Source of the DNA: Octopus bimaculoides
Lineage: Eukaryota
Length of the DNA stretch: 36,193 bases
Direction of reading: 5' to 3'
Assembly: GCF_001194135.2 (NCBI RefSeq)
Contig: NC_068983.1
Span: forward strand, 137,556,822 to 137,593,014
Part shown: positions 3,401 to 36,193 of the stretch, piece after piece
Position numbering within the stretch: position 1 is the stretch's first letter
Layout of the letters: each line of letters starts with the position of its first letter
The notes under the pieces: model-generated
What the model was told of the DNA's origin: nothing
The model's database searches: none
Seen by the model: the letters and a program-made list of their open reading frames with translations, nothing else
Translations under genes and position numbers: made by a program

Positions 3401-3717
3401 ACTGCGAGTCAGCATATACGACGTGAAATCGCAAGTAACGTGGCAAATTTATAATCGTGTTCGAAGGGTCCTAATCCCTTACATTGCCTTTATAAAGAGC
3501 AATATTGTGCAAAGTGAAGACGATACACTAATATTTCAGATGGAATCTTGATATAAATACAAGTTTTCTGTAGACATAATTAGGAAAGAATTATTGGTAT
3601 GATTCGTTGTTTGTAACATTGAAAAGATATTGCACAAATTTTTTTTTTAGATATCTAGAAAATGTGTGTCAATGTTCTCTGATAATAGGAAATTTTTTTT
3701 TCTAGTGTTATGAAATT

Positions 3718-6700
3718 ATGCGTCCCAAACGATCGTCACTGAGCAGTCTCACCAAAGAAGCTAGGAGGGCAAGAGAAAAACGGAAAAGGGAAACCACAGA
3801 AGAAAGGCAATTAAGATTAGAAAATCACAGGCAAAGACAATTGGCTCGTCAGCAGACAGAAACAGCAGAAGAAAGGCAGGCAAGATTAGAAGCTAAGAAA
3901 CAGAGGACAAGAGCTTATCGTGCAGCTCTCAAGGTAGGTGTCAGGTATACATTCTTAAGCATCACACACCTATAGGAGAAATATAACAAAGGTCAGCTTA
4001 CAGAATTTATTTGCAAGGTCATTGATATTAAAATTTATTTCAGAGAGCAAGGATGTATGTAGAATAAATGTATTAAGAAGCTTTGTGATAAGAAGTTTCT
4101 TGTGATGTCAACTTTTAGTATTGCAGCCTCTCCACAATTTTCGTTAAGAATGAGCTCAACAAAATACTTTGCAACCTTCAGTCATACTTTGCAACCTTCC
4201 TTGAATCTCCATGTCAGGTATAGGAGCTGTGCAATTGATAAACATCGGTGGGCAAGCCAAGTAACTTACCATGCTCTGTACTTCATTATCTGGTATTATC
4301 AGCAACACAGAAATACGCACCTGCAATACAATATCATGTACACTATACATTGTTGAGGGATCACTATCCATATAAATTGAGTATAATTTTGGAATCAATA
4401 TACGTGATCAAAATACAAGTTTAATGAAGCTACTGTTAAATCAATGGTAGATTCAATCAGGAATTACAATTTTGAAAAATTTTCTGAAGAAAATCTACCA
4501 GAGAACGTCTGTGTGAATTGTAGCAGCAGTTACTATACATTTGATGTTGAAGACAAATTATAACAATCTACCATCATGTGAGATTTCAGAATAGGATACG
4601 TATAACATGTAGCTTCATTTTCATTTCAGTTTCGGAATTCTATTGGGATTCTCTGTTCAGATTGATTTTGAATGCTACATATTGCTATATACTTATGTGA
4701 CTGACAGATTCCATTTTGTATCTTTTTATTTCTTTCTTTGATTATGCCTCACTTCCTCAACACTCAGATGAAAATGATGCAGCAAAAAAAGAACGAAATA
4801 CAGCACCTTGGGGAGCAACACTTGAAGAAGCAACACCAGAATCAAATGTTAAAAAATCAACAATCACATGACAGATGGTATGTGGTGACTAAAATGGTAT
4901 TTTGACAATGTTATTGTGTTACTATTTTTCTTACATATTTCTTCTGAATTAATTGCAAATTTTCATTTTAGGCAAATGGACAGTGCTTTATCATCTCCAA
5001 AGACTTCAAAATGTGTACATCTAACTACTAAAATGCCAGTCCAGCAAGATTCAAGTTTAGCACAAGCATCGCAAAATATTACAAAGCCAGCCCAGGTGTT
5101 GGCTTCACCATTTCAAATAACTCCATCCAAATCAAATCTGGTGAAAAATCCAAATCAAACAACCGTATCTAAATCAATAATTAGAAAAAAAGATTTACCG
5201 AAACAAAAATTGCTAGTTACTAGTCATCAACGTAATGTCATGTCTAACCTAGCATCATTGTGGAGAAGTAGAAAATTTTGTGATGCCTGTATTACCAATG
5301 GCTCATCTACTGTAATGGTAAGTATACAGTTGTAAACTTTTTCATATTTATAAACTGTTTCTATTGTCATCATCATGATAACTAAAAAATCTTGCTTGTA
5401 AGTCTAAAAATTTATGCATAATTTCTAATGTGCTTAATATCAAGATATTCTCCCTCTATATTTCTCAAAGGTAGGTGTAGCCTTTAGTTTTAAGTATTAT
5501 TATTATCAGAAAATTCTACGATTCCGTCATTGAAAATAACTTTTTCTGAAACATTTGCTTATTAATATAGAATAGAACATTTTACAGAAAAAGAAAATGG
5601 AGTTGATTTAATTAAGGTATTAATGAAATAACTCTCTGAGATAAGTGGCTTGAGACTTTTGGGAGTGAATAGGTTTTGTAGAAGATGGAGAAAGATACAC
5701 TTACATTTTTCTACTTTATAAACATGTTTCTTAAATGTCTATCATTGTATTGTTGGCAAGCTATAAATATACTGTTATTATTTACTATATTTCAGGTCCA
5801 TAAAATAGTCTTGTCTGCTGTGTCTCCAAAATTATTATTATTAATTAGTACACACATCTCAACTCAGTTTTATGAAGTAAAATTTCCTGAAGTAAGCACA
5901 GAAACTTTAATGGCTTTTGTTGAATACATGTATACTGGACTATTAGATCTTGATCTTAATATTTTACAACAGCTAAAAGTCATTGCAAAACAATTAGACA
6001 TGAAAGACTTACAAAATATATGTGATGTACATCTTTTACGTGGAGCACGTCAGCAACTTTCTTCAACAGTGACTGCGTTTGATGATCCCAGGCAGATGCC
6101 ATCTGATGTTTCAGCTGTTCCGACAGAGGATATTAAACAGGAGATTTCTCAAAATGAATCAGCAGAACTTAAAGAAGATGAGGTTAGCATCTTTGAGCAA
6201 GAGGTTGAGGCTGCATCTTCGGACACTAAGGATAGCAGCTCTTCAGTTAGTTCTCTTATTCTTCCTACTGTAAAAATAGAGCCTGTAGGACCTGATGACG
6301 ACAAATATGGTCAAATGAATAAAAGGGCTTCAACATCTTGTTCAGTTTCAGATAGTTCTCAGGCACTAAACACTCCTTTGAATTCTATAGCTGTGTCCAC
6401 TACAGATTTTAGCTTACCGTTTTCAGATACCACAAACAGCAAAGCAACTGCAAATAAGATACGTGGAACATCACCTAAATTAAAATCTAACGAAGTTGAA
6501 AGTTCTCCAGTTTCTGACTCATCTCCTTTGTCATATCGTGAAGAAAAACTGTGTTCTCAATCTAGACTCATAAGAGAAGACCCTTCTAAACCACTAAATC
6601 GAACAATAACAACTCAGACAATTGACAACAATGAGATTTGTGGTAGCAATGAAGGTGTCTATCCTGTAGGACTTTTTACAGCAGGAGGGGACAGATTACC

Positions 6701-9212: not shown

Positions 9213-9655
9213 AAGAGAGTTATCGAACCTGGAGGCTCTGGAAACGAACTTTTCATCTACTGTTGAACCTTCTCTTGTAAGTTTGATTTGTTTCCATCAC
9301 TTTGCTATTATGAAACACTCGAAAATCGTCTAATGTGGTTCTATTATTTTCACATCGTAAATATTATAATTCTTATGTTTCTTCCTGATTACCCATATTG
9401 TTTTTTTTGTGATGAATGGTCAATCATGCCTGCCGTCCTTTAGTGAATAATATTTGTATCACGTAACTATCTTCTACATATATGTGATGCTATATCTTAA
9501 TTAAATATAATGCATAGAAAATCTAGAAAAACAGATACTTATTGCTTTTAGCGAATTCAGAATTTGAATTCCTTAACTAAAGGATACATCTAAAATGAAA
9601 TATCGTAAAAATATCCAATTGTCTTTGTGGTAAATAAAAAAATTGATATTTCTAC
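9213..9655 (+). promoter_or_regulatory. Conserved upstream non-coding block with candidate 5' UTR exon and donor at 9277 (paralogues ~21926-22420 and ~33188-33930)
   Basis: aagagagttatcgaacctg..ctc.ggaaacgaa..ccttctc is followed by gtaagt, gtaaga or gttagt upstream of copies 2, 3 and 4. Function is inferred only. Confidence 0.45.
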
Positions 9656-10696: not shown

Positions 10697-11878
10697 TATG
10701 TCAGACAACAGGAGGCACAGATCAATTGGTGGAGGCAGAGGACCAGAAAATGAAGATCTAGAGATTGAACTCTTACAGTGGATTGTTGTTTAGCGTGCAA
10801 ACAATGTAATTGTAAATTATCGCCATTTACGGGAATATGCTTTTGAATTGGTAAAAAGGTTTGGAATTGGAATGAACAGCTTTAGATGTTCTGATAAATG
10901 GATTTTCAATTTCATGAAACAGAATAATCTGACTGTGAGAAAGATTACACATGTTGGTCAAGCAGACAATAAAAACACTTGGAGAAAAGGCACAAATCAC
11001 CAGTGACTATCTAGATAGTATTCCAATGTTAACAACAGATAAGGATGCTAACCATATTTATAATATGGATGAAACACCTGTATATGTTGACATGTTGAGT
11101 TCAACAACCATAGACTTTGTTGGCAATAAAAATGTAGATGCTAGCCCCTGTGGTGCTACCAAAGCTCGTTTTACTACTGTGTTGTTTGTTAATGCTGCAG
11201 GAAAGGTGTTGAAAACGATGATTACCCTTAAAGGATTGAAAAACGTGCCTAAAATCAACGTCGTAAAGAATATTTACTTAACAGTCTCCAACAGAGGATC
11301 AATCACATATGAACTCATGCAGCTGTGGGCTGACAAAGTGTTTGGGCAGAGAACAGCACAACTATCCCATGCTCAAAATTCAGTGCTATTCATGGACGAA
11401 TGCTCAGTGCATGAGAAAACAGAGCTGCTAGAAGTGTTCAAACGTAGGAATACAATTCTCAAACTTATACCTCCTAAAACAACATCTTACTTGCAGCCGT
11501 TAGATGTATCAATTATTGGTCCATTCAAGAAAGCCCTTCGTGCAGAATGGGATAATTAGTTTTTCAAATGACAAAAAGGAGTATACAAATAAAGAATATT
11601 GCAAAAGACCCTAACAAGAGATAGTGAACTTTGTGGCTCAAGCTGTTGCCACTTTAAATAAAGAAACTATAAAGCATGCTTTTGAATGTTGTGGAATTGC
11701 TCCTCGTGGACAGACTGTAGAACATAGCCTCTTAAACTCATGCTTACAGGATGTTTTGTCTGGCCTTGAGGTAAATGCGCCAGATGCACAAAATGATAAA
11801 ATTGAAGATGAGATACAAGTGAAATTAGCACATGTGAATTATGACCAAGTAACAAATGAAGAAATTTGTGATATTTAA
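10697..11878 (+). mobile_element. pogo/Tigger-like DDE transposase pseudogene (CENP-B-type HTH + DDE_1)
   Basis: LEIELLQWI..FRCSDKWIFNFMKQNNLTVRKIT (HTH), a frameshift, then IYNMDETPVY..RFTTVL..VLFMDECSVH..IPPKTTSYLQPLDVSIIGPFKKALR..AFECCGI. Internal stops are present. TIRs not confidently located. Confidence 0.9.
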
Positions 11879-12572: not shown

Positions 12573-12710
12573 CAATATTGTGAAAAGTGAAGACCATACA
12601 CTAATATTTCAGATGGAATCTTGATATAAATACTAGTTTTCTGTAGACATAATCAGGAAAGAATTATTGGTATAATTTGTGGTTTGTAACATTCTGTTTA
12701 AAAGATATTG

Positions 12711-12996: not shown

Positions 12997-13086
12997 AGGT
13001 ATTGTACTAATTTTTTTTGGATATCTAGAAAATGTGTGTGAGTGTTCTCAAATAATAGGACATTTTTTCTCTAGTGTAATGAAGTT

Positions 13087-16000
13087 ATGCGTACCAAACG
13101 ATCATCACTGGGCCGTCTCACCATACATGGAAAGAAGACAAGAGAAAGACGGAAAAGGGAAACCACAGAAGAAAGGCAATTAAGATTACGAAATCATAGG
13201 GAAAGACAATCTGCTGCTCGACAGGCAGAAACAGCAGAAGAAAGGCAGGCAAGATTAGAAACTCAGAAACAGAGGGCAAGAACTCGTCGTGCAGCTCTCA
13301 AGGTAGGTGTCAGGTATACATTCTTAAGCGTCACACACCTATAGGAGAAATATAACAAAGATCAGCTTACAGAATTTATTTGCAAGGTCATTGATATTGA
13401 AATTTATTTCAGAGAGCAAGGATGTATGTAGAATAAATGTATTAAGAAGGTTCATGATATGAAGTTTCTTATGATGTCAACTTTTAGTATTGCAGCCTCT
13501 CCACAAATTTCATTAAAAATGAGCTCAATAAAATCATGAATTAAGGCTCAGTCATACTTTGCAACCTTCCTTGAATCTCCATGTCAGGTTTAGGAGCTGT
13601 GCAATTGATAAACATTAGTTGGCAAGCCAAGTACCTTACCATGCTCCATACTTCATTACCTGGTATTATCAGCAACACAGAAATACGCACCTGTAATAAA
13701 TTGAGTAGAACTTCAGAATCAATGTATGTGATAAAAATACTACTTTAAAGAAGCTACTGTTAAATCAATTGTAAATTCAATCAGGAATTACAACGTTGAA
13801 AAATTTTCTGCAGAAAATCTACCAGAGAACGTCTGTGTGAATTGTGGCAGCAGTCACTATATATTTGATGTTGAAGACAAATTACAACAGTTTACCACCA
13901 TGTCAGATTTCAGAATAGAATAAGTATAACATGCAGCTGCATTCTCATTTCAGTTTTGGAATTCTGTAGAGATTCTCTGTTCAGGTTGATTTTGAATGCT
14001 TTTGGGGATTTACCATATACTCATGTGGCTGACAGATTCCATTTTTTCTTAGTGGATTCAATGTGGGAATTCAAATATTTGTTAGTCTTACAAACAAGAA
14101 TTTTTAGTTATCATTGACATTTGCATTAGCCTAAATTATTCATTCATCACAGTCCAAATTATTTCCATTGAACTGAAATCTTTATTCTTTTATCTTTTTA
14201 TTTCTTTCTTTGATTATGCCCCACTTCCTCAANNNNNNNNNNNNNNNNNNNNNNNNNNNNNNNNNNNNNNNNNNNNNNNNNNNNNNNNNNNNNNNNNNNN
14301 NNNNNNNNNNNNNNNNNNNNNNNNNNNNNNNNNNNNNNNNNNNNNNNNNNNNNNNNNNNNNNNNNNNNNNNNNNNNNNNNNNNNNNNNNNNNNNNNNNNN
14401 NNNNNNNNNNNNNNNNNNNNNNNNNNNNNNNNNNNNNNNNNNNNNNNNNNNNNNNNNNNNNNNNNNNNNNNNNNNNNNNNNNNNNNNNNNNNNNNNNNNN
14501 NNNNNNNNNNNNNNNNNNNNNNNNNNNNNNNNNNNNNNNNNNNNNNNNNNNNNNNNNNNNNNNNNNNNNNNNNNNNNNNNNNNNNNNNNNNNNNNNNNNN
14601 NNNNNNNNNNNNNNNNNNNNNNNNNNNNNNNNNNNNNNNNNNNNNNNNNNNNNNNNNNNNNNNNNNNNNNNNNNNNNNNNNNNNNNNNNNNNNNNNNNNN
14701 NNNNNNNNNNNNNNNNNNNNNNNNNNNNNNNNNNNNNNNNNNNNNATTATGTGATGCCAGTATTAGCAATGGCTCATCTACTGTGATGGTAAGTATACAG
14801 TTGTAAACGTTTTCACATCTATAGACTGTTCCTAATGTCATCATCATAACTAAAAAATCTTGCTTGTAAGTCTAAAAATTTATGCATAATTTCTAATGTG
14901 CTTAATATCAAGATATTCTTTCTTCTACTTCCCTCTATATTTCTCAAAGGTAGGTGTAGCCTTTAGTTTTAAGTATTATTATTATCAGAAAATTCTACGA
15001 TTCCGTCATTGAAAATAACTTTTTCTGAAACATTTGCTTATTAATATAGAAGAGAATATTTTACAGAAAAAGAAAATGGAGTTGATTTAATTAGGGTATT
15101 AATGAAATAACTCTTTGAGATAAGTGAAGTTTAAATCAACTTTCAGTGGCTTAAGACTTTTGGGAGTGAATAGGTTTTGTAGAAGATGGAGAAAGATAAA
15201 CTTACATTTTTCTACTTTATAAACATATTTCTTAAATGTCTATCATTGTATTGTTGGCAAGCTATAAATATACTGTTATTATTTACTATATTTCAGGTCC
15301 ATAAAATAGTCTTGTCTGCTGCATCTCCAAAATTGTTATCACTAATTAGTACACACATCTCTTCTCAGTTTTATGAAGTAAAATTTCCTGAAGTAAGCAC
15401 AGAAGCTTTAATGGCTTTTGTTGAATACATGTATACTGGACTATTAGATCTTGATCTTAATATTTTACAACAGCTAAAAGTCATTGCAAAACAATTAGAC
15501 ATGAAAGACTTACAAAATATATGTGATGTTCATCTTTTACGTGGAGCACGTCAGCAACTTGCTTCAACAGTGACTGTGTTTGATGATCCCAGGCAGATGC
15601 CATCTGATGTTTCAGCTGTTCCGACAGAGGATATTAAACAGGAGATTTCTCAAAATGAATCAGCAGAACTTAAAGAAGATGTGGTTAGCATCTTTGAGCA
15701 AGAGGTTGAGGCTGCATCTTCGGACACTAAGGATAGCAGCTCTTCAGTTAGTTCTCTTATTCTTCCTACTGTAAAAATAGAGCCTGTAGGACCTGATGAC
15801 GACAAATATGGTCAAATGAATAAAAGGGCTTCAACATCTTGTTCAGTTTCAGATAGTTCTCAGGCACTAAACACTCCTTTGAATTCTATAGCTGTGTCCA
15901 CTACAGATTTTAGCTTACCGTTTTCAGATACCACAAACAGCAAAGCAACAGCAAATAAGATACGTGGAACATCACCTAAATTAAAATCTAACGTATTTGA

Positions 16001-16624: not shown

Positions 16625-17017
16625 GGCTGATGCCAGTGCTGCCTGACTGGCACCTGTGCTGGTGGTACATAATAAGCACCATTCAAGTGTGAGTCAATGC
16701 CAATTCCACATGCTCCTTGTGCCGGTGGCTCATAAAAACACCATCCGAATGTGGTTGATGCCAGTGCTTCCCGATTGGCTCCTGTGCCGGTGACACATAA
16801 AAAGTACCATTTGAACATGGTCGATGCTAGTGTTGCCTGACTGGTTACTGTGCTGGTGGCACATTAAAAGCAACTTACAATCTTGGACTGGTTAGTGTTA
16901 GGAAGGGCATTCAGATCAGATTGGAGCCTGGTGCAGCTTACTGGCTTGCCAGTCCTCAGTCAAACTGTCCAACCCATGCCAGCATAGAAAATGGATATTA
17001 ATCAATGATGATGATGA
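16625..17017 (+). mobile_element. RTE-LINE 3' UTR fragment with about four ~63-bp units and a (TGA)n tail
   Basis: Same unit and terminus as 19420-19905. Confidence 0.75.
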
Positions 17018-18959: not shown

Positions 18960-19905
18960 GTTGTGATTGAAGTAGAGGACATGTGTAGGCTTGAAAGAAA
19001 TGAAGCTCGTATGATCTGCTGGATGGGTAATGTAGGTGTAAACGCTCTGAAAGAAAAGTTGGGCATAAGAAGCATCAGATGTGGTGTGCAAGAGAGGCGA
19101 CTGTGCTGTTATGGCCATGTGTTATGTATGAATGAAGACAGCTGTGTGAGGAAGTGCCATTCCCTAACTGTAGAAGGAACTTATGGAAGAGATAGAGCCA
19201 AGAAAACATAGGATGAGGTGGTGAAGCATGACCTTTGAACATTGGGCCTCACAGTGGTGATGACAGGAGACTGGGACCTTTGGAAATATGCTGTGATTGA
19301 GAAGACCCAGCAACTAAAGTGAGATTGAAGCCATGCATGTCCGGCCCTGTTAAGAATACCCCTGATGCATCAAGCGATATGATAGGCTTGAGAAGACCTG
19401 CTGAGTCAAGTAAAGCCAATATCATAGCTGGGACCAGTGCTCTCTGACTGGCTCCCATGTCAGTGGCACGTAAATAGCACCATCCGAACTTGGTCGATGT
19501 CAAGTCTGTCTGACTGGCTCCCATGCCGGTGGCATGTAGAAAGCACCAACTGAACATGGCCAATGCCAGTACCCCCAGACTGGCTCCTGTACTGGTGGCA
19601 GGTAAAAAGCATTGACTGATCGTGGCCAATGCCAGTAGCCCTGATTGGGTCTTATGCCGGTAGCATGTAAAAACACCATCCAAATGTAATTGATGCCAGG
19701 CCCGCGTGACTGGCTTCTGTGCTGGTGGTACATAAAAAGTACCCACTACACTCTTAGAGTGGTTGGTGTTAGGAAGGGCATCCAGCTGTAGAAACATTGC
19801 CAGACCAGATTGGAGTCTAGTGCAGCCACTGGCTCTGCAGACCTCAATCAAATCGTCCAACCCATGCCAGCATAGAAAATGGATGTTAAATGATGATGAT
19901 GATAT
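18960..19905 (+). mobile_element. 5'-truncated RTE-clade LINE: ORF C-terminus, 3' UTR with about five ~65-bp tandem units, (TGA)n tail
   Basis: RLERNEARMICWM..LGIRSIRCGVQERRLCCYGHVLCMNEDSCVRKC..VEGTYGRDRAKKT*DEVVKHDL resembles the RTE RLRWYGHV..GRPRKTW tail. Units at ~19434, 19501, 19567, 19633 and 19696. Confidence 0.85.
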
Positions 19906-21454: not shown

Positions 21455-21850
21455 AAATGGCATGAAGTGTTGTTACAAGACCCCTCCCAACTTTTTGTTT
21501 GCAATGTTCACATTGAGCATATTCAAAGGTATTTCAGTCCTAGTCTTTTTTGTAGACATACCATATCTAAGGGCAACATTATTCAAAGTGTCCTTCTCCT
21601 TTTATGACTTTTGGAATACTTTTGTCCATAAAACGATTTGACCAGGGATTATCTGAGACCAAAGAGCAACCTCAGGTTTTTATAGTGTCAAATAACAATA
21701 GGTATAGTGTTCTAACATCTAAAAATTTCTGTTAGTCACCACTTTTCCAAAGATTACATTATGAAATTACACCAAATTTTCATGGTTTCTTTTACTTGAA
21801 TAGAAATATTTACTTAAAATATAAAATCCATTAACTTTAAATCATATGAA
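21455..21850. repeat. Locally duplicated block X (copies at ~21455-21850, ~23085-23655, ~32515-33105)
   Basis: Shared catgaagt.ttgtta..cacattgagc..ttcaaagtgtccttctccttttatgacttttggaatacttttg..gtcaccacttttccaaagatt. Confidence 0.8.
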
Positions 21851-23678
21851 GCGTTTCTTAGCGGCGATATCATTATCATTGAGGTTTATCCGAGGCTAGT
21901 TGAATAAGCTAATCCATCAATAAGGAAGAGAGTTATCGAACCTGGAGACTCTGGAAACGAATATTTCAGCTATTGTTAGCCCTTCTCTGGTAAGATTAGT
22001 TTGTTTCCACCACTTTGCTAATATGAAATACTCGAAAATCGTTTAATGTGGTTCTTCTATTTTCACATCTTAAATATTATAATTCTTTTGTTTCCTTCTG
22101 GTTACCCATATTGTTTTTTTTGCAATGAATGATTAATCATGCCTGCCGTGCTTTAGTGAATAATATCTTACCAAGTAACCATCTTCTATTTATATATGAT
22201 ATCTGAATTAAATATAATGCATAGAAAATTCAGAAAAACTCAGCATTACGCAAAATATGTTTTAAAAGGCATTAGGAAAGAACAACTCTGTAATCGAATT
22301 GTTTCTTATAACAAACTTTTTGGGAAGTAAATACGAAGTTTTAGGGAAGTTATGAAATATCGTAAAAATACCCAATTGTCTTTGTGCGAAAAAAAAAAAA
22401 TTGACATTTCTACATTTGATATAAGACTACAAATTTGGAATCGAACTCATTACTAATGACTTTTGTTTTCTGTAGCAGAGATAGATATCTGGCCAGGTAT
22501 TGGTGGTGATGGTTTGCACGAATACCCGGCCTTTTCACTCATTCTTCGAAATCTCGCCAAAAACGTTCGATGCTTTTGGTGTGTATGTGTGGTGGTAAAA
22601 TTATTTAGTACTGATATCGAGTCTGGTGTGAAACTATAAATTTACCATCATATTTTATTTAGTTTCTCATGTTGAATCCAGCAAAGAAGCTTTATCATAT
22701 ATAATTTAGGAGTTCAGATTTTGAATCCAATGCAATTCAGCGAATGCAAAATGAAATCGCTAGTAAAATGGCGAATTCATAATAGTCTTTCAAGGGGAGC
22801 TAATCCAATAATATTTGTTGATACCACAATTATCCAAAGAAATAAAAGAACTTGCAAAATCCTGATCGAATTTCACTCCTCCCCATTGTCCTAGAAGTGT
22901 CAAAGATTATCTGGTAATTTAAAAGAAAAAAGATAGCGATTTCTTTAACCATAACTCATTCCATTAGTGAATGAGAGCAGTGCTAAATATGTCATTGTAA
23001 AGGGCTCGCAAGCACTATTTTGAAAAAACCATTATCTCTCTTCATTTTTCTACTCCGTATACCTTGTAACTTATTGGTGAAAGGGCGTATTGTGATTGTG
23101 AGGTCAGGCATTTATAGTTACCTTTGGTGCTTTGGTTGTTTTGTTTATGGCTGAAGATTTGTGTTACAGTTAAATTTCCTTGATATACATGTCTTCGTGA
23201 TTTTGAAAGATAACTCGAGTGTCAAGTACCTATTAAAAGATGCTTACAACATTTATGTTCATAGAAACATGTCTGTCATGAAGTGTTATTAGCCCCTGCT
23301 CACATTGAGCAGACGTAAGTTCAAATATATTCCAGTCTTAGCCAAACCATTTTTCTTTGTAGACATACTGTATCTAAGGACAATTCTTCAAAGTGTTCTT
23401 TTATGATTTTTGAAATACTTTTGACCACAAGGTTATTCAACGAGGGATCACCTGAGGTTTTTATATTGTCAAATAACAATAGGTATGGTGATCTGCATCT
23501 AGAAATTTCTGTTAATCATATCGTCACCACTTTTCCAAAGATTTCATTATGAAATTACACTTAATTTTGATGGTTTCTTTTACTTGCATATAAATATTTA
23601 CTTAAATAAAAATAATTTTAAATCCATTAACATTAAATAATATTTTACTGAACGTTACAGATTCAACCGTTCTTAAAA

Positions 23679-26600
23679 ATGGAAGAGAGAATAAGTCAAC
23701 AAAGAGCGGCAGCAAGAGAGAGACAGAGAAGACGACGACAGCGGTTATCATCCGAAGAGAGGCAAGCAGTCCGTGAACGTATTCGAGAACGTATGCAAAA
23801 AATGAGGAGTAATATGAACGAAGAGGAGAGAGAACTTTATCTTCAGAATAGGAGAAACAGGGATCGAGAAAGAAGAAGTAATATGGATCAAGATGAGAGA
23901 GAACTTTATCTTCAGAATAAAAGAAACAAAGATCAGGAGAGAAGAAATAACATGAATCCTGAGGAGAGAGAAACTTATCTACAGAATATGAGAAATAGAG
24001 TTCAAAAGCGAAGAAATGCCATAAATGAAGATCAACAAAATGAAGTTATGCATCCCAAACTATCGTCACTGGGCCGTCTCACCAAACATGCTAGGAAGGT
24101 AAGAGAAAGACAGAAAAGGGAAACCACGGAAGAAAAACAATTAAGATTACAAAACCAGAGGCAAAGACAATTTGCTAGTCAGCAGGCAGAAACAGCGGAA
24201 CAAAGGCAGGCAAGATTGGAAGCTCAGAAACAGAGGACAAATACTTATCGTACAAGTCTCAAGGTAAATATCAGGTATACATTTTTAAGCATCACACACC
24301 TATAGAGGAAATATAACAAAGATCTGCTTATAGAATTTATTTGTGAGGTCATTGATATTGCAATTAATTTCAGAGACCAAGGATATATGTAGGATGAATG
24401 TATTAAGAAGCTTCATAACATGAGGTTTCTTGTGATGCAAACTTTTAGTACTGCAGCCTCTCCAAAATTTTCATTAAAAATGAGCTCAATAAAATTATGA
24501 ATTAAAGCTCAGTCATACTTTGTATGCTTCCTTGAATCTCCATGTCAGGGTTAGTAGCTGTGCAATTGATAAACATCAGTGGGCAAGCCAAGTAACTTAG
24601 TGTGCTCAGTACTTCATTATCTGGTATTATCGGCAACACAGAAATACGCACATGTAATAAAGTATCATGTATGCTATACAGTGTTGAGGGATCACTATCA
24701 ATTATAAATTGAGTAGAACTTTGGAATCAATGTATGTGATAAAAATCCAAATTTAATGAAGCTGCTGTCATGTCAATTGTAAATTCAATCAGGAATTACA
24801 ATGTTGAAAAATTTTCTGAAGAGAATCTACAAGAGAAAGTCTGTGTGAATTGTGGCAGCAGTTACTATATATTTGATGTTGAAGACAAATTACAACAGTC
24901 TACCATCATGTCAGATTTCAAAATAGGATAAGTATAACATCCAGCTCCATTCTCGTTTCAGTTTTGGAATTCTGTAGAGATTCTCTGTTGAGGTTGATTT
25001 TGAATGCTTTTTCTTTAGTGAAAGTTTCAGTGTGGAAATTAAGCATTATGTGTTAGCCTTACAAACAAGAATTTTTAGTTATCATTGACATTTTCATTAA
25101 AATAACTTATCAATTCGTCACAGTCTAAATTATTTCCATTGAACTGAAATCTTTATTTGTATCTTTTTATTTCTTTCTTTGATCATGCCTCACTTCCTCA
25201 ACACTCAGATGAAAATGACACAGAAAAAAAAGAATGAAACACAGCACCTTGGGGAGCAACACCTGCAGAATCAAAAGTTTAAAAATCAACAATCACATGA
25301 CAGATGGTATGTGATGACTAAAATGGTATTTTGACAATGTTATTGAGTTACTATTCTTCTTATATATTTCTTCTGAATTAATTGCAAATTGTCATTTTAG
25401 GCAAATGGACAGTGCTTTATCATTTCCAAAGACTTCAAAATGTGTACATCTAACTACTAAAATGCCAGTCCAGCAAGATTCAAGTTTAGCCCAAGCATCG
25501 CAAAATATTACAAAGCCAGCTCAGGTGTTGACTTCACCATTTCAAATAACTCCATCCAAATCAAAGCTGATGAAAAATCCAAATCAAACAACTGTATCTA
25601 AATCAATAATTAGAGAAAAAGATTTACCGAAACAAAAATTGCTAGTTACTAGCCATCAACATTATGTTATGTCTAACCTAGCATCCATGTGGAGAAATAG
25701 GAAATTATGTGATGCCAGTATTAGCAATGGCTCATCTACTGTGATGGTAAGTATACAGTTGTAAACGTTTTCACATCTATAGACTGTTCCTAATGTCATC
25801 ATCATGATAACTACAAAATCTTGCTTGTAAGTCTAAAAAATTATGCTTAATTTCTAATGTGCTTAATATCAAGCTATTCTTTCTTCTACACCCCTCTATA
25901 TTTCTTAAAGATAGGTCTAGTTGACGTGTATGTTCTTACTGGTGCAATTCTTAGATAAATCTGTTGTTTTATAATTAATTGGTCATAAAATCTTTTATNN
26001 NNNNNNNNNNNNNNNNNNNNNNNNNNNNNNNNNNNNNNNNNNNNNNNNNNNNNNNNNNNNNNNNNNNNNNNNNNNNNNNNNNNNNNNNNNNNNNNNNNNN
26101 NNNNNNNNNNNNNNNNNNNNNNNNNNNNNNNNNNNNNNNNNNNNNNNNNNNNNNNNNNNNNNNNNNNNNTATAGATAAATTTTTTATTAAGTTTTAAGTT
26201 TTATTATTATCAGAAAATTTTATGATTCAGTCATTGAAATACACTAGAATATTTTACAGAAAAAGATAATGGAGTTTATTTAATTAAAGTATTAATGAAA
26301 TAACTCTCTGAGATAAATGAAGTTTAAACTAACTTTCAGTGGCTTAAGACTTGGTTAGTCAATAGCTTTTGTAAAAGTTGGAAAAACATAAACTTACATT
26401 TTTCTACTTTATGAACATGTTTCTTAAATATCTATCATTGTATTGTTGGCAAGCTATAAACGTACTGTTTATTATTTACTATATTTCAGGTCCATAAAAT
26501 AGTCTTGTCTGCTGTGTCTCCAAAACTGTTCTCAGTGTTTAGTACACACATCTCTTCTCAGGTGTTTGAAGTAAAATTTCCTGAAGTAGTTAGTACAGAA

Positions 26601-27464
26601 GCTTTAATGGTTTTTGCTGAATACATGTATACTGGACTATTAGATCTTGATCTTAATATTTTACAACAGCTAAAAGTCATTGCAAAACAATTAGACACGA
26701 AAGACTTAGAAAATCTGTGTGATGCTCATCTTCTAAGTGGAGCAAGTCAGCAACTTGCTTCGACAGTTACTGCATTTGATGATCCCAGGCAGATGCCATC
26801 TGATGTTTCAGCTGTTCCTACAGAGGATATTAAACAAGAGATTTCTCAAAACGAATTAGCACAACTTAAAGAAGGTACAGTTAGAACCTTTAAGCGAGAG
26901 TTTGATGCTGCATCTCTGGACTCTAAGAGTGGCAACTCTCCAGTTGGTTCTGTTATTCTTCCCAGTGTAAAAATGGAGCCTGTAGGACCTGATGATGACA
27001 AATATGGTCAAATGAATGAAAGAGCTTACACATCTTGTTCAGTTTCAAATAGTTCTGAGACTCTAAAAACTACTTTGAATTCTATAGTTGTGTCCACTAC
27101 AGATTTTAGCTTACCGTTTTCAGATACCACAAACAGCAAAGCAACAGCAAACAAGATACATGGAACATCACCTAAATTAAAATCTAATGTATTTGAACGT
27201 TCTCCAGTTTCTGACTCATCTCCTGTGTCATATCGTGAAGAAAAACTGTGTTCTCAATCTAGACTCATAAGAGAAGACCCTTCTAAACCACTAAATCGAA
27301 CAATAACAACTCAGACAATTGACAACAATGAGATTTGTGGTAGCAATGAAGATGTCTATCCTGTAGGACTTTTTACAGCAGGAGGGGACAGATTATCATT
27401 ATCATCAACACAAGTTACCAATGTCAAAAATACAGGTTTATATAAAACAGATGGTCTTACTTGA
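23679..27464 (+). CDS. STPR-like repeat + BTB/POZ protein, copy 3 with an expanded repeat exon; join(23679..24263,25209..25306,25401..25746,26490..27464), 667 aa
   Basis: Phases 0/2/0 join in frame (2004 nt). Donors gtaaat, gtatgt, gtaagt. Four extra 23-aa repeats at 23745-24020 plus the two shared repeats from 24120. BTB motif intact. Confidence 0.85.
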
Positions 27465-31998: not shown

Positions 31999-34038
31999 TG
32001 TGATGAATGCTGGAGGGTATATCAGCTGAAACGTTGTGTTGACAGTAAACAAGATGAGGAGAAATATCCATCAAATGTAAATAATGATGTGTTTAATGTT
32101 CAGCTTGAACTTCTGCAGGACAATGTTGTCAGGAAATGTATGGTTAGGAAGGGAATTCCAAAGAGAAAGAACTGAGTGAAATATCTAGGGAAGAGTATGT
32201 CAGTAGCTAGTTCAGAGAAGCAGAGGTTTTCATGGTTGCAATAAAAGTGGCAGAGAGAAGAAATAGCATGTTTGTGAGGTAATTGTTGATACTTGTTGGT
32301 AAGTGAATTATCACTAATCATATGAATGACTTTTTAAATGTGTATGTGTGTGTGTGGCAGCACTATTTCAAAGCATGAGCAGTTCACCTATGTTGGGTTT
32401 ACTTAAGCTTTGTAAGTGGTCAGCTAAAGTATTTGCGGACCCTTAAGAGGAATCCTTGTTTTTGCAGTGCAGTTTTGGCTATGATATAATAAGGTTTGGC
32501 ATAAGAGATAAATAGTGATTGTGAGGTCTGGCATTTATAGTTACTTTCAGTGCTTTGGTTGTGTTGTTTATGGCTGAAGGTTTGTGTTACAATTAAATTT
32601 CCTTGACATATGTGTCTTTGGGATATTGAAAGATAGCTCGAATGTCAAGTTGCTATTAGAAGATGCTTACATCTATGTCTGGCATGAAGTATTGTTACAA
32701 GCACCTTCCCCAATTTTTTTTACAAAGCTCACATTGAGCAGGTGTAAGTTCAAAAATATACCAGTGCTAGCCAAATCATGTTTCTTTGTAGATACACTGT
32801 ATCCAAGCACAACATTATTCAAAGTGTCCTTCTCCTTTTATGACTTTTGGAATACTTTTGCCTACAAGGCTATTCGACCAGGGATCACCTGAGACTAATA
32901 GCACCGTCAGGTTTTGATATTGTCAAATTACAATAGGTATAGTGGTCTGCATCTAGAAATTTAGTTAATCATATCGTCACTACTTTTCCAAAGATTACAT
33001 CATGAAATTGCACTCAATTTTCATGGTTTCTTTCACTTGAATATAAATATTTGCTTTAAAATAAATAATTTCAAACCTACTAACATTAAATTATATTTTA
33101 CTGAAATTTGAAGCTTTGCTCAGTGGCAATATCATTGTCATTGAGATTTTTCCGACGTTAGTTGAAAAAGGTAATTCATCCATAATTAAGAGAGTTATCG
33201 AACCTGCAGGCTCAGGAAACGAACATTTCACCTACTGTTGGCCCTTCTCGGGTTAGTTTAATTTATTTCCACCGCTTTGCTATTATGAAACACTCGAAAA
33301 TCGTTTAATGTGGTTCTATTATTTTCACATCTTAAATGTTATAATTTTTTTGTTTCCTCCTGATTACCCATATTGTTTTTCCTTTTGCGTTCAACAGTTA
33401 ATCATTCCTGCCGTGCTTTAGTGGATAATACATGGGTAAATATTTGTACCATGTCACTATCTTCTACATATATGTGATGCTATATCCTAATTATATATAA
33501 TGCATAGAAAATTCAGAAAAGCTCGGCATTACGCAAAATACGTCTTAAAAAGTATTAGGAATGAACAACTCTGTAATCGAATTGTTTCTTATTACAAACT
33601 TTCTGGGAAGAAAATACAAAGCGTTAGGGACTTTATAAAAATTAGAATTAATAAGAATAATTCATGAACGTGCTTCAATTAAACACGAAAATATTTAATT
33701 TATTCTAAGACTTCAAAATGAGTAAACTACCCAATCGTTCCAATCTGTTGATTATTTACAAAATAAATGAGTAGCGATCACCAGATTAGCTTAAAAGGCA
33801 GATACTCATTGCTTTCGTCGAATTCAGAATTTTTTAATTCCTCAACTAAAAGATACATGCAAAATGAAATATCGTAAAAATATCCAATTGTCTTTGTGGT
33901 AAATAAAAAAATGATATTTCTACATTCGATATAAAACTACAAATTTGGAATCGAACTAATTACTAAAATATGTGTCCATCTTGGCAATGTTTAAAATCAC
34001 ATTTTACTACTTTTCTCACGTTGACTCCAGCAAAGAAG

Positions 34039-34070
<32 letters not shown>

Positions 34071-34498
34071 NNNNNNNNNNNNNNNNNNNNNNNNNNNNNN
34101 NNNNNNNNNNNNNNNNNNNNNNNNNNNNNNNNNNNNNNNNNNNNNNNNNNNNNNNNNNNNNNNNNNNNNNNNNNNNNNNNNNNNNNNNNNNNNNNNNNNN
34201 NNNNNNNNNNNNNNNNNNNNNNNNNNNNNNNNNNNNNNNNNNNNNNNNNNNNTCACTTACACCCCGTTTATAAAGAGCAATATTGTGCAAAGTGAAGACC
34301 GTACACTAAGATTTCAGTTGTAATCTTCATATAAATACTAGTTTTCTGTAGACATAATCAGGAAAGAATTATTGGTATAATTTGTGGTTTGTAACATTAT
34401 GTTTAAAAGATTGTACAAATTTTATTTTCAGATATCTAGAAAATGTGTGTCAATGTTCTCTGATAATAGGACGTCTTTTTTTCTAGTGTTATGAAGTT

Positions 34499-36193
34499 AT
34501 GCCTCCCAAAATATCATCACTGGGCCGTCTCACCAGGAATGCTATGAGGGTAAAGGAAATACGGAAAAACGAAACCACAGAAGAAAGGCAATTAAGATTA
34601 GAAAATCATAGGGAAAAACAGTTTGCTAGACGGCGGACAGAAACAGCAGAACAAAGGCAGGCAAGATTAGAAGCTCGGAAACAGAGCACATATAATTATC
34701 GTACAAATCGCAAGGTAGATATCAGGTATACATTCTTAACCATCACACACCTATAGGAGAAATATAACAAAGTTGTGATATCAACTTTTAGTATTGCAGC
34801 CTCTCCACAATTTTCATTAAAAATGAGCTCAACAAAATTATGAATTAAAGCTCAGTCATACTTTGTATGCTTCCTTGAATCTCCATGTCAGGGTTTGTAG
34901 CTGTGCAATTGATAAACATCAGTGGGCAAGCCAAGTAACTTAGTGTGCTCAGTACTTCATTATCTGGTATTATCTGCAACACAGAAATACGCACATGTAA
35001 TAAAGTATCATGTATGCTATACAGTGTTGAGGGATCACTATCAATTATAAATTGAGTAGAACTTTGGAATCAATGTATGTGATAAAAATCCAAATTTAAT
35101 GAAGCTGCTGTCATGTCAATTGTAAATTCAATCAGGAATTACAATGTTGAAAAATTTTCTGAAGAGAATCTACCAGAGAAAGTCTGTGTGAATTGTGGCA
35201 GCAGNNNNNNNNNNNNNNNNNNNNNNNNNNNNNNNNNNNNNNNNNNNNNNNNNNNNNNNNNNNNNNNNNNNNNNNNNNNNNNNNNNNNNNNNNNNNNNNN
35301 NNNNNNNNNNNNNNNNNNNNNNNNNNNNNNNNNNNNNNNNNNNNNNNNNNNNNNNNNNNNNNNNNNNNNNNNNNNNNNNNNNNNNNNNNNNNNNNNNNNN
35401 NNNNNNNNNNNNNNNNNNNNNNNNNNNNNNNNNNATGTTGAAGACAAATTACAACAGTCTACCATCATGTCAGATTTCAGAATAGGATAAGTATAACATC
35501 CAGCTCCATTCTCGTTTCAGTTTTGGAATTCTGTAGAGATTCTCTGTTCAGGATGATTTTGAATGCTATATATTGCTATATACTTATGTGACTGACAGAC
35601 TCCATTTTTTCTTAGTGGATTCAATGTGGGAATTCAAATATTTGTTAGTCTTACAAACAAGAATTTTTAGTTATCATTGACATTTGCATTAGCCTAAATT
35701 ATTCATTCATCACAGTCCAAATTATTTTCATTGAATTGAAATCTTTATTCTTTTATCTTTTTATTTCTTTCTTTGATCATGCCTCACTTCCTCAACACTC
35801 AGATGAAAATGATACAGAAAAAAAAGAACGAAATACAGCAACACTTAAAGAAGCAACACCAGAATCAAATGTTAAAAAATCAACAATCACATGACAGATG
35901 GTATGTGGTGACTAAAATGGTATTTTGACAATACTATTGAGTTACTATTCTTCTCTTCTGTATATTTCTTCTGAATTAATTGCAAATTTTCATTTTAGGC
36001 AAATGGACAGTGCTTTATCATCTCCAAAGACTTCAAAATGTGTACATCTAACTACTAAAATGCCAGTCCAGCAAGATTCAAGTTTAGCACAAGCATCGCA
36101 AAATATTACAAAGCCAGCTCAGGTGTTGGCATCACCATTTCAAATAACTCCATCCAAATCAAATCTGGTGAAAAATCCAAATCAAACAACCGT
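34499..36193 (+). CDS. STPR-like repeat + BTB/POZ protein, copy 4, 3'-partial; exons 34499..34714, 35803..35900, 35999..>36193
   Basis: Acceptor tctag at 34486. AAG|gtagat, ctcag|ATG, TG|gtatgt, tttag|G. All exons open and homologous to copies 1-3. The BTB part lies beyond the window. Confidence 0.8.

What the first reader, a model, noticed from the sequence alone, without database searches (positions are those of the whole stretch)
23661..24263. Copy 3 has four extra 23-aa (69-bp) repeats of a second subtype and a different 5' splice context
Seen: LSSEERQAVRERIRERMQKMRSN, MNEEERELYLQNRRNRDRERRSN, MDQDERELYLQNKRNKDQERRNN and MNPEERETYLQNMRNRVQKRRNA start at 23745, 23814, 23883 and 23952, exactly 69 bp apart. 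A 10-aa partial unit (INEDQQNEVM) then merges at aatgaagttatg into the exon shared by all copies. The tctag acceptor used by copies 1, 2 and 4 is absent. A candidate ttacag acceptor at 23660 lies 18 nt before the ATG. Inference: repeat number varies (2 vs 6), which would change target length or affinity. FMBP-1 uses four repeats, so the 2-repeat copies may depend on BTB dimerisation to bind.
Basis: partly seen in the sequence, partly recalled or inferred. Interest (0 to 1): 0.74.

Follow-up and report, generated by a model that had tools for sequence, protein, structure and literature searches.

The report
Helitron transposase start fused to octopus BTB gene
The four "extra" 23-residue repeats of copy 3 are real, but they are the first 120 codons of a Helitron jumping-gene protein fused in frame onto one octopus BTB gene; three octopus species keep them, making this a clean example of a host gene acquiring a new N-terminus from a transposon.

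Summary
There is a 69-bp (23-aa) tandem array at 23745-24020, its open frame starts at the ATG at 23679, and the tctag acceptor of copies 1, 2 and 4 is absent.

The window is Octopus bimaculoides chromosome CM046603.1, a tandem array of genes with an N-terminal STPR-like exon followed by BTB exons. Segment 23655-24035 is not an expansion of the gene's own repeats. It is a 24-nt leader plus codons 1-120 of a Helitron transposase, covering the basic 23-aa repeat array that precedes the zinc-finger-like motif.

Evidence for this origin:
- It is 81-88% identical in DNA to a decayed Helitron on another chromosome.
- That element's protein matches Helraiser at E = 3.5e-25.
- In O. vulgaris and O. 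sinensis the orthologous locus still carries about 0.9 kb of Helitron leader. The 5' junction is canonical (host A|TC) at an AT site that is empty in the paralogous units.

A deletion from Helitron codon 120 into the exon removed the rest of the element and the acceptor, giving an in-frame fusion.

The fused reading frame is intact in all three species, with dN/dS 0.23. It equals RefSeq XP_014782229.2 (667 aa).

The role of the ttacag site and any effect on DNA binding remain untested.

The parts
22809..23652 (+). Upstream segment specific to copy 3. It is 280 bp of unassigned sequence followed by a second, partial copy of the inter-unit region. O. bimaculoides has lost about 7 kb at its 3' end (23652/23653) relative to O. 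vulgaris.
   Evidence: Homology with the upstream regions of copies 1 and 4 ends at 'ctaatcc' (22808). 23089-23652 is 80% identical to 32512-33105 and 73.5% to 21505-21847. 22461-23652 matches L003 1812-2982 at 82.9%, whereas 23655 onward matches L003 9977 onward.
23653..23678 (+). Remnant of the Helitron 5' leader, including the candidate acceptor ttacag (23655-23660) and 18 nt of open frame before the ATG.
   Evidence: The window reads cgttacagattcaaccgttcttaaaaATG. O. vulgaris and O. sinensis read cgcttacagattcaactattcttaaaaATG. The Helitron L001 reads cacttacacattcaatcattcttaaaaATG.
23679..24035 (+). Start codon and first 119 codons of a Helitron transposase, forming its N-terminal basic repeat array. 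Units: U0 23679-23744, U1 23745-23813, U2 23814-23882, U3 23883-23951, U4 23952-24020, tail 24021-24035.
   Evidence: It is 81-88% identical in DNA to L001 9842-10153. L001 encodes P0002, which matches Helraiser 7lcc_A residues 77-228 at E = 3.5e-25, and a PIF1 ORF lies downstream. The same repeats sit directly upstream of the C..C.ALRF..NCCH.GKV motif in P0030, P0033, P0034, P0042, P0058 and P0060.
24036..24038 (+). Three junction bases of uncertain origin. They are caa (codon 120, Gln) here and cca (Pro) in O. vulgaris.
   Evidence: A three-way comparison of the window, L003, the Helitron L001 and copies 1, 2 and 4.
24039..24263 (+). Host part of the exon, shared with copies 1, 2 and 4. It encodes a basic helix followed by two STPR-type repeats: S1 at 24120-24188 (ETTEEKQLRL...) and S2 at 24189-24257 (ETAEQRQARL...). 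The donor is AAG|gtaaat at 24263/24264.
   Evidence: Glu1, Thr2 and Arg9 are read against PMC4856987.
25209..25306 (+). Exon 2 of LOC106877738, a Gln/Lys-rich linker.
   Evidence: Acceptor ctcag| and donor TG|gtatgt. The model reproduces XP_014782229.2 exactly.
25401..25746 (+). Exon 3 (MDSALS... to the start of the BTB domain).
26490..27464 (+). Exon 4, encoding the BTB/POZ domain, a Ser-rich C-terminal tail and the stop codon.
   Evidence: Pfam BTB at E = 2.7e-10 on the 667-aa protein. Exon borders.
3706..3933 (+). Copy 1 short STPR exon (acceptor tctag at 3701-3705, ATG at 3718). The empty Helitron target site gtgaagacgA|T lies at 3514-3524.
   Evidence: P0008 (547 aa) starts with MRPKRSS.
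13075..13302 (+). Copy 2 short STPR exon (acceptor tctag at 13070-13074, ATG at 13087). The empty target site gtgaagaccA|T lies at 12587-12597.
   Evidence: RefSeq isoforms X2 and X3 use this exon.
34487..34714 (+). Copy 4 short STPR exon (acceptor tctag at 34482-34486, ATG at 34499). The site homologous to the Helitron target lies at 34292-34302 and reads gtgaagaccgt.
   Evidence: P0003 starts with MPPKISS.

Best explanation
SHOWN:
- The window is a tandem array in Octopus bimaculoides of genes with an N-terminal STPR-like exon followed by BTB exons.
- In the ancestor of O. bimaculoides and O. vulgaris/sinensis, a Helitron inserted in sense orientation into an AT dinucleotide about 185 bp upstream of the STPR exon of one unit (now LOC106877738).
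- The present sequence joins Helitron codon 119/120 (...NEDQ) through 3 unassigned bases to the 4th base of the host exon.
- The rest of the transposase gene, the Helitron 3' end, about 185 bp of host sequence and the tctag acceptor are all missing.
- O. bimaculoides has also lost about 7 kb that the other two species retain, including all but 24 nt of the Helitron leader.

INFERRED:
- A single deletion made the in-frame fusion.
- The fused exon is a first coding exon. Translation starts at the transposase ATG (23679) and yields a 667-aa protein. Five Helitron-type basic helices precede the gene's own basic helix and two STPR repeats, and these are followed by a linker, the BTB domain and a tail.
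- The added helices lengthen a DNA-tracking or nuclear-targeting array on a BTB-oligomerising protein, changing its affinity or the length of its target site.
For: Helitron origin:
- Window 23655-24035 is 81-88% identical to L001 9842-10153.
- In L001 the same ATG and repeats, now carrying stop codons, run into an ORF (P0002) that matches Helraiser residues 77-228 at E = 3.5e-25.
- A PIF1 helicase ORF follows in L001 (E = 1.5e-40).
- The extension itself aligns colinearly, though weakly, with Helraiser residues 4-112.
- Relatives from crustaceans and other samples show the same order: MEER... start, 3-5 repeats, then the Cys motif.

Insertion site:
- In O. vulgaris L003 and O. sinensis L004 the host sequence reads gtgaagaccA|TCttctatatt. 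About 0.85-0.9 kb of leader follows, homologous to L001 8908-9959 at 82.5%.
- The paralogous units read gtgaagac(c/g)A|Tacactaa and are uninterrupted.

Fusion junction: it is identical in the three species.

Constraint:
- There are no stops or indels in 120 codons in either lineage.
- dN/dS is 0.23, with 9 synonymous and 10 non-synonymous differences (Fisher p = 0.0025).
- Amino-acid identity of the extension between species is 91.7%, against 90.6% for the BTB part and 84.5% for the tail.

Gene model: my exons reproduce XP_014782229.2 exactly. O. sinensis XP_036357292.1 has the same 667-aa architecture.

Fold:
- AlphaFold2 (single sequence, mean pLDDT 84) predicts helices 2-21, 25-45, 48-68, 71-91, 94-124, 126-147, 150-170 and 173-194.
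- That is the pattern of a 2-residue linker plus a 21-residue helix described for the FMBP-1 STPR domain (PMC4856987).

Published background: the Helraiser N-terminal 489 residues are required for DNA binding (PMC4778049). STPR domains have been reported inside canonical Helitrons (PMC11417382).
Against: - No transcript or peptide data could be reached. The RefSeq models are predictions.
- RefSeq isoforms X2 and X3 of the same gene bypass the copy-3 exon. They may be artefacts of the assembly gap at 14233-14745, which hides unit 2's own exon 2.
- The 145 bp of intron after the exon is as similar between species (93.8%) as the exon (94.2%). The constraint argument therefore rests on dN/dS from only 19 substitutions and two lineages.
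- O. bimaculoides lacks the Helitron leader that could hold the promoter, so its transcription start is unknown.
- The extension repeats lack the Glu1, Thr/Ser2 and Arg9 signature of STPR, and nothing matches the FMBP-1 STPR chains or any Pfam STPR model.
- Whether one deletion or several steps made the fusion cannot be told.
Confidence: 0.65

Rival explanations
1. The Helitron-derived segment is there, but it is not part of the functional protein. It would serve only as 5' UTR or promoter, with translation from Met124 (MHPKLSS, the counterpart of the start of copies 1, 2 and 4). Alternatively, the exon is a relic that mature transcripts skip.
For: Copies 1, 2 and 4 start at the equivalent Met. 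RefSeq isoforms X2 and X3 of LOC106877738 use the copy-2 exon instead. The adjacent intron is as conserved as the exon.
Against: The 120-codon frame is intact in two lineages separated by dS of about 0.15, although Arg, Glu, Gln and Lys codons are often one step from a stop. dN/dS is 0.23 (p = 0.0025). The free Helitron copy L001 has accumulated stops over the same stretch. The extension is as conserved in protein as the BTB domain. Isoforms X2 and X3 may stem from the gap at 14233-14745.
Confidence: 0.22
2. One reading: copy 3 expanded the gene's own STPR array from 2 to 6 units by tandem duplication.
For: Units U2-U4 are 72-81% identical in DNA and exactly 69 bp apart. The window has one more unit than Helitron copy L001, so a single unit was probably gained or lost at some time.
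Against: The extension's units share at most about 8 of 23 residues with the shared repeats and lie 10 residues out of register with them. The whole block, with its ATG and leader, is 81-88% identical to a Helitron elsewhere in the genome. It is flanked by a Helitron 5' end in O. vulgaris and O. sinensis.
Confidence: 0.03
3. The reverse direction: the long exon is ancestral to the gene, and a Helitron captured it.
For: Helitrons capture host gene fragments (PMC4778049). The HELIANO paper describes STPR as a domain 'captured' by Helitrons.
Against: The repeats precede the Cys motif in transposase N-termini of bats (Helraiser), amphipods, a mantis shrimp and unnamed samples. At the octopus locus the Helitron 5' terminus and leader are contiguous with the ATG and interrupt a site that is intact in all paralogous units. 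The paralogues lack the block.
Confidence: 0.04
4. An assembly artefact: 22810-24040 is a mis-join in the gap-rich O. bimaculoides assembly.
For: The window has eight N gaps. The 23652/23653 junction is seen only in this assembly.
Against: The junctions at 22808/22809 and 24038/24039 are present in the gap-free O. vulgaris locus. The O. sinensis locus, also gap-free, has the 24038/24039 junction. Window 23655-24408 is colinear with L003 at 94.2%.
Confidence: 0.02

Closest known systems
Helitron transposase N-terminal region (Helraiser, PDB 7LCC; canonical Helitron elements reported to carry STPR domains)
   Same: The extension is homologous and colinear with the first ~115 residues of Helitron transposases. 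These are basic repeats of about 23 aa lying upstream of the zinc-finger-like Cys motif. In Helraiser the N-terminal 489 residues are needed for DNA binding (PMC4778049). STPR domains have been reported in canonical Helitrons (PMC11417382).
   Different: Only codons 1-120 remain here. The Cys motif, Rep nuclease, helicase and 3' end are absent, so it is not a transposon any more. The fragment is spliced to host BTB exons and conserved.
STPR DNA-binding domain of Bombyx FMBP-1 (also ZNF821, CG14440; PMC4856987)
   Same: Strict 23-residue period. The predicted pattern of a 2-residue linker plus a 21-residue helix is the same. The two shared repeats carry Glu1, Thr2, Arg6, Arg9 and Leu10. Composition is basic.
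   Different: The extension units have Met/Leu at position 1, Asn/Asp/Ser at 2 and Tyr/Val at 9. There is no detectable sequence match to the solved FMBP-1 STPR chains or to any Pfam model. FMBP-1 has four repeats at its C-terminus and no BTB domain.
[quoted passage not shown]
   Same: A transposon-derived, presumably DNA-binding, module is fused in frame to a host protein-interaction domain (BTB), in a tandemly expanded, transposon-rich gene cluster. It is retained across species.
   Different: The donor is a Helitron. The captured part is the N-terminal repeat array with the transposase's own start codon. The fusion is by deletion inside an exon rather than by splicing to a transposase exon. 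It extends an array of a similar kind that already existed, rather than adding a new type of domain.
Drosophila Ken (the O. vulgaris annotation calls these genes 'transcription factor Ken-like')
   Same: It has a BTB domain.
   Different: Pfam finds no C2H2 zinc fingers in P0051, P0008 or P0027. The name appears to reflect only BTB similarity.

Membership tests
STPR domain (FMBP-1 type) | Tandem repeats of exactly 23 residues | tested here: met
   Period 69 bp. The lag-23 autocorrelation is about 11 sd above shuffles.
STPR domain (FMBP-1 type) | Each repeat is a 2-residue linker plus a 21-residue helix (PMC4856987) | tested here: met
   The AlphaFold2 single-sequence model (pLDDT 84) gives helices 25-45, 48-68, 71-91, 150-170 and 173-194, with 2-residue breaks at the unit starts. 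This is a prediction only.
STPR domain (FMBP-1 type) | Conserved Glu1, Thr/Ser2 and Arg9 in each repeat (PMC4856987) | tested here: not met
   For the four extra repeats the residues are L-S..V, M-N..Y, M-D..Y and M-N..Y at positions 1, 2 and 9. The feature is met only by the two shared repeats (E-T..R), read directly.
STPR domain (FMBP-1 type) | Sequence match to solved FMBP-1 STPR chains or to a Pfam STPR model | tested here: not met
   No such hit at E <= 10 in the PDB, and none in Pfam (E <= 1, E <= 10).
STPR domain (FMBP-1 type) | Binds DNA along the major groove, 4 bp per repeat | not testable with these tools
   Needs EMSA, DAP-seq or a structure.
Helitron (transposase N-terminal region) | Homology to the N-terminus of a RepHel transposase | tested here: met
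   81-88% DNA identity to L001. L001's ORF P0002 matches Helraiser at E = 3.5e-25. The extension aligns with Helraiser residues 4-112, colinear but weak, at E = 2.8.
Helitron (transposase N-terminal region) | 5' end TC joined to a host A at an AT target, with empty sites available for comparison | tested here: met
   Met in the orthologous loci L003 and L004 (gaagaccA|TCttctat) against the empty paralogous sites. In the window itself this junction has been deleted.
Helitron (transposase N-terminal region) | Rep (HUH) and helicase domains, and a 3' hairpin with CTRR end | tested here: not met
   Absent from the window. Helitron homology stops at 24035 and host exon sequence follows from 24039. 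The piece is a fragment, not an element.
Host-transposase fusion gene | Transposase-derived coding sequence in frame with host domain exons in one gene model | tested here: met
   Exons 23679-24263, 25209-25306, 25401-25746 and 26490-27461 reproduce XP_014782229.2 exactly. The BTB domain is confirmed by Pfam.
Host-transposase fusion gene | Retained under purifying selection in more than one species | tested here: met
   dN/dS 0.23, p = 0.0025, O. bimaculoides against O. vulgaris. O. sinensis has the same 667-aa model. This covers only two independent lineages and 19 substitutions.
Host-transposase fusion gene | Expressed as mRNA and protein | not testable with these tools
   No RNA or peptide data were reachable. 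The read-through ORF is not on record in the assembly collection.

The most novel reading that the evidence does not exclude
The Helitron N-terminal 23-aa repeats and the STPR repeats of animal transcription factors (FMBP-1, ZNF821 and the shared octopus exon) would be one homologous class of major-groove-tracking helices. The octopus BTB cluster would then be a modular locus that repeatedly takes N- or C-terminal DNA-binding modules from transposons: Helitron here, and THAP, Tc5/CENP-B, FLYWCH and ZSWIM3_N in neighbouring paralogues. It may even share 5' exons between tandem units. On this reading, the Helitron array was kept because it plugs directly onto a compatible array and lengthens the DNA site that a BTB oligomer reads.
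Probability: 0.2. Interest if true: 0.75.

Novelty: new variant of a known kind. Interest (0 to 1): 0.55.

Why it matters
Domestication of transposase DNA-binding domains by host regulators is well documented for cut-and-paste transposons. In the papers I searched I found no case of a host gene that kept a Helitron transposase coding fragment.

Every step can be read from sequence here:
- the target AT site, with empty paralogous sites for comparison;
- the canonical 5' junction;
- the in-frame deletion junction;
- a later lineage-specific deletion;
- purifying selection on the fused frame.

The case also links the little-studied N-terminal repeats of Helitron transposases to the STPR type of DNA-binding helix. 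It offers a natural comparison for asking what the number of such helices does to DNA binding: three helices in copies 1, 2 and 4 against eight in copy 3, on otherwise 80-90% identical BTB proteins. Finally, it adds a concrete example to the question of how transposons contributed to cephalopod gene-family innovation.

Tried and rejected
I rejected this because P0003 and the RefSeq models splice it to the BTB exons about 1 kb downstream.
- I looked for another copy of the extension inside the window with sensitive blastn and tblastn. There is none, only weak protein similarity to the shared exons.
- Pfam scans of the exon, of paralogues and of Helitron relatives gave no STPR or Helitron_like_N hit on these short pieces.
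- PDB sequence searches with the shared exon and with the repeat-rich N-terminus of the distant paralogue P0027 found nothing.
- A Foldseek search of the AlphaFold model against the PDB gave no match, as expected for an extended helical zigzag.
The unspliced 208-aa ORF is not on record. I therefore found no independent O. bimaculoides contig to test the 23652/23653 junction.
- I considered using a 3-sequence alignment as a profile for the large search. I dropped it because the unrelated C-termini of P0001 and P0002 would have become profile columns.
- Rfam and tRNA scans of the window were empty.
- I considered a simple Helitron insertion with premature 3' truncation. I rejected it because about 185 bp of host sequence next to the target site is also missing.


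Full report
**1. What is in the sequence**

The ORF 23679-24305 begins MEERISQQRAAARERQRRRRQR.
- TRF finds a 69-bp period over 23810-24031, with 3.2 copies, 77% matches and score 248.
- Units 2-4 are 72-81% identical in DNA. Unit 1 is only 41-46% identical to them.
- The lag-23 autocorrelation of residues 1-137 is about 11 standard deviations above 5000 shuffles.
- From aatgaagttatg (24039) onward, copy 3 aligns with copies 1, 2 and 4 at 82-87%. Upstream of it nothing aligns, and the tctag acceptor of the other copies is missing.

Two corrections apply. Residues 1-22 form a further unit of the same array. The two shared repeats begin at residue 148, 10 residues out of register with the extension's array.

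**2. Where it is and what the gene looks like**

The window is 100% identical, gaps included, to Octopus bimaculoides GCA_001194135.2 chromosome CM046603.1. Window position 24499 equals record position 137,581,320.

It holds four tandem units on the + strand. Each unit has an STPR-like exon, followed about 1 kb downstream by a small Gln/Lys-rich exon and two further exons that encode a BTB domain and a Ser-rich tail. The STPR exon is therefore N-terminal to the BTB domain of the same unit.

Splicing 23679-24263, 25209-25306, 25401-25746 and 26490-27461 gives 667 residues, identical to RefSeq XP_014782229.2 (LOC106877738 isoform X1).

Isoforms X2 and X3 of the same RefSeq gene map exactly to the window:
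- X2 is 9333-9356 + 13075-13302 + the unit-3 exons 2-4.
- X3 is 13087-13302 + the unit-3 exons 2-4.

This shows that a gene model uses the tctag acceptor. These cross-unit models may, however, be artefacts of the assembly gap at 14233-14745, which hides unit 2's own exon 2.

**3. Origin of the extra repeats**

Protein searches with the exon found very few relatives.
- One is O. bimaculoides LOC106877253 (P0002). In it, MNPEEREAYLQNMRNRVQQQRNAIKEDQ runs straight into ...GDMNVICRYCGALRF..NCCHKGKV....
- P0002 matches residues 77-228 of the reconstructed bat Helitron transposase Helraiser (PDB 7LCC) at E = 3.5e-25.
- Its locus L001, on chromosome CM046623.1, has a PIF1 helicase ORF 1.4 kb downstream (E = 1.5e-40).
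- Window 23655-24035 is 81-88% identical in DNA to L001 9842-10153. The match includes the ATG and about 24 nt of leader. L001 carries stop codons there and has one repeat unit fewer.
- The extension itself aligns colinearly but weakly (E = 2.8) with Helraiser residues 4-112.

An exhaustive phmmer search gave 22 hits.
- Several show the same order: an MEER-type start, 3-5 units of 23 aa, then the C..C.ALRF..NCCH.GKV motif. Examples are P0030, P0033, P0034 and P0042.
- The closest named relatives of P0002 are from the amphipod Trinorchestia, one of them annotated as Pif1-like helicase.
- A mantis-shrimp protein (P0001) has the same N-terminus at 61% identity, followed by an HMG box.

Published work agrees that canonical Helitrons can carry STPR domains (PMC11417382). 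It also shows that the Helraiser N-terminal 489 residues are needed for DNA binding (PMC4778049).

The extension is therefore the first 120 codons of a Helitron transposase gene.

**4. How the fusion arose**

The orthologous loci of O. vulgaris (L003, OX597816.1) and O. sinensis (L004, CM016861.1) have no gaps and keep more of the element.
- Window 23655-24408 is colinear with L003 9977-10730 at 94.2%.
- Upstream of that, L003 9092-10094 is 82.5% identical to the Helitron leader L001 8908-9959.
- The leader begins TCTTCTATATT directly after host ...gtgaagaccA.
- The same host sequence is uninterrupted in the paralogous units: gtgaagacgA|Tacactaat at 3514, gtgaagaccA|Tacactaat at 12587, and likewise at L003 21817 and L004 21768.

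This is the canonical Helitron junction, a 5' TC after the A of an AT target. It lies about 185 bp upstream of the STPR exon.

At the other end, Helitron sequence stops at ...gaagatcaa. Three bases of uncertain origin follow (caa, or cca in O. vulgaris). Host sequence then resumes at aatgaagttatg, the fourth base of the exon.

I infer that a deletion removed four things:
- the rest of the element;
- its 3' end;
- about 185 bp of host sequence, with the acceptor;
- the first three exon bases.

This left the transposase ATG in frame with the host exon. A simple 3'-truncated insertion would not explain the missing host sequence.

O. bimaculoides has in addition lost the equivalent of L003 2983-9974. 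That produces the 23652/23653 junction and leaves only 24 nt of leader. The older breakpoint at 22808/22809 is shared with O. vulgaris.

**5. Is it kept for a reason?**

The 120-codon frame is intact in O. bimaculoides, O. vulgaris and O. sinensis, and the repeat number is the same in all three.

Between O. bimaculoides and O. vulgaris:

| Region | Synonymous differences | Non-synonymous differences | dS | dN | dN/dS | Fisher p |
|---|---|---|---|---|---|---|
| Extension (codons 1-120) | 9 | 10 | 0.15 | 0.035 | 0.23 | 0.0025 |
| Shared part of the exon | 6 | 8 | 0.14 | 0.046 | 0.32 | not computed separately |

Against O. sinensis, amino-acid identity is 91.7% for the extension, 90.6% for the BTB part and 84.5% for the tail, with no indels over 667 residues.

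Caveats: only two independent lineages and 19 substitutions are involved. The first 145 bp of the following intron are as conserved as the exon.

**6. Structure and family membership**

AlphaFold2, run on the single sequence (mean pLDDT 84, pTM 0.28), predicts eight helices: 2-21, 25-45, 48-68, 71-91, 94-124, 126-147, 150-170 and 173-194. Each full unit is thus a 2-residue linker plus a 21-residue helix. That is the pattern described for the FMBP-1 STPR domain, in which each helix covers 4 bp of the major groove (PMC4856987).

The two shared repeats carry the STPR signature Glu1, Thr2 and Arg9. The Helitron-type units do not; they have Met/Leu, Asn/Asp/Ser and Tyr/Val at those positions.

No sequence search linked either part to the solved FMBP-1 chains or to a Pfam model, and Foldseek found nothing.

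I therefore describe the extension as STPR-like in architecture. It is a member of the Helitron N-terminal repeat family, not a demonstrated member of the FMBP-1 STPR family.

**7. Splice context**

The hexamer ttacag (23655-23660) comes from the Helitron leader.
- It reads ttacac in L001.
- In O. vulgaris and O. sinensis it reads cgcttacag, preceded by a good pyrimidine tract.
- In O. bimaculoides the 7-kb deletion ends 8 nt upstream of the AG and removes that tract.

The 18 nt between it and the ATG are open in frame. The in-frame stop tga at 23649-23651 lies upstream of the acceptor.

A conserved candidate donor (CTCTG|GTAAGA) lies at about 21990, in the homologue of the upstream non-coding exon. 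The MWFYYFHI mini-exon has a GT donor only in unit 2.

None of this shows use of ttacag as an acceptor. The RefSeq coding sequences start at the ATG.

**8. Most likely mechanism, and rivals**

- Shown: the Helitron origin, the insertion site, the junctions, conservation of the frame, and identity with the RefSeq model.
- Inferred: a single deletion made the fusion; the ATG at 23679 is used; and the five added basic helices extend the DNA-contacting or nuclear-targeting surface of a BTB-oligomerising protein.

I put about 0.9 on the origin and about 0.65 on the whole statement including translation.

Rivals:
- The segment is present but non-coding or skipped (0.22).
- The gene's own repeats expanded (0.03).
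- A Helitron captured the exon from the host gene (0.04).
- The join is an assembly artefact (0.02).

**9. Comparison and novelty**

The general phenomenon is established: host regulators, including BTB genes, capture transposon domains (PMC12062965). Three things differ here:
- the donor is a Helitron;
- the captured part is the N-terminal repeat array with the transposase's own start codon;
- the route is an exonic in-frame deletion rather than splicing.

In addition, the capture lengthens an existing array of similar helices. My literature searches found no description of this gene or of a host gene retaining Helitron transposase coding sequence. The library is incomplete, so this is absence of evidence only. 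I rate it a new variant of a known kind, with interest 0.55.

Noticed in passing
window 9333-9356, 13075-13302, then 25209 onward: RefSeq isoforms X2 and X3 of LOC106877738 join the STPR exon of unit 2 to exons 2-4 of unit 3, skipping unit 2's BTB exon and the copy-3 exon. This is either sharing of 5' exons between tandem units or an artefact of the gap at 14233-14745, which hides unit 2's own exon 2.
   Followed up: partly
window 23652/23653; L003 2983-9974: O. bimaculoides lacks about 7 kb that O. vulgaris and O. sinensis have upstream of the fused exon. The missing stretch includes most of the Helitron leader, so the promoter of the long form may differ between species. This junction could not be checked in a second O. 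bimaculoides assembly.
   Followed up: partly
window 24430-24861 vs 34773-35204: Intron 1 of units 3 and 4 is 97.9% identical over 432 bp, whereas neighbouring segments are 82-87% identical. This looks like a recent gene-conversion tract between units.
   Followed up: no
window 10951-11559 and 11624-11878 (+): Two adjacent ORFs lie in the spacer between units 1 and 2. The first has a DDE_1 (pogo/Tigger-type) transposase domain (Pfam E = 1.5e-16), so this is a decayed cut-and-paste transposon.
   Followed up: partly
window 16629-16872 and 19444-19678: Two arrays of a 66-bp tandem repeat (3.6-3.8 copies) contain the motif CCGGTGGCA(C/T)(A/G)TAAAAAGCACC. Single copies of the same motif occur elsewhere in the window (for example around 2100-2200 and 3330-3400), suggesting a SINE-like repeat family.
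   Followed up: no
P0001 (Oratosquilla oratoria LOC143040549): A mantis-shrimp protein has the same Helitron-type N-terminus (61% identical, four repeats) followed by an HMG box instead of the Cys motif. It may be an independent fusion of a Helitron N-terminus to a host domain, or an annotation chimera.
   Followed up: partly
P0058-P0067: The nearest named relatives of the octopus Helitron N-terminal region are from the amphipod Trinorchestia longiramus, at 56-64% amino-acid identity. This hints at horizontal spread of this Helitron lineage among marine invertebrates.
   Followed up: no
neighbouring genes on CM046603.1: Other BTB paralogues in the same cluster carry THAP (P0007, spliced upstream of its STPR exon), Tc5/CENP-B, FLYWCH, DUF3504 or ZSWIM3_N domains. 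A distant paralogue (P0027/P0028) has four or five 'AMSxEER' 23-aa repeats at its N-terminus. The cluster seems to recruit transposon-type DNA-binding modules repeatedly.
   Followed up: partly
L003 10001-26394 (O. vulgaris CAI9720157.1, P0005): The O. vulgaris gene model spans 16.4 kb. It uses a donor 18 codons earlier in exon 1 and, judging by its range, ends in the BTB exon of the next unit, although unit C's own BTB exons lie at L003 12020-15461. This is probably a mis-annotation.
   Followed up: partly
window 21926-22106, 9213-9393, 33188-33368: A conserved block upstream of each unit holds a consensus donor (CTCT(T/G)|GTAAG), which is mutated to GTTAG in unit 4. It is probably the non-coding first exon of the short-form genes.
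   Followed up: partly
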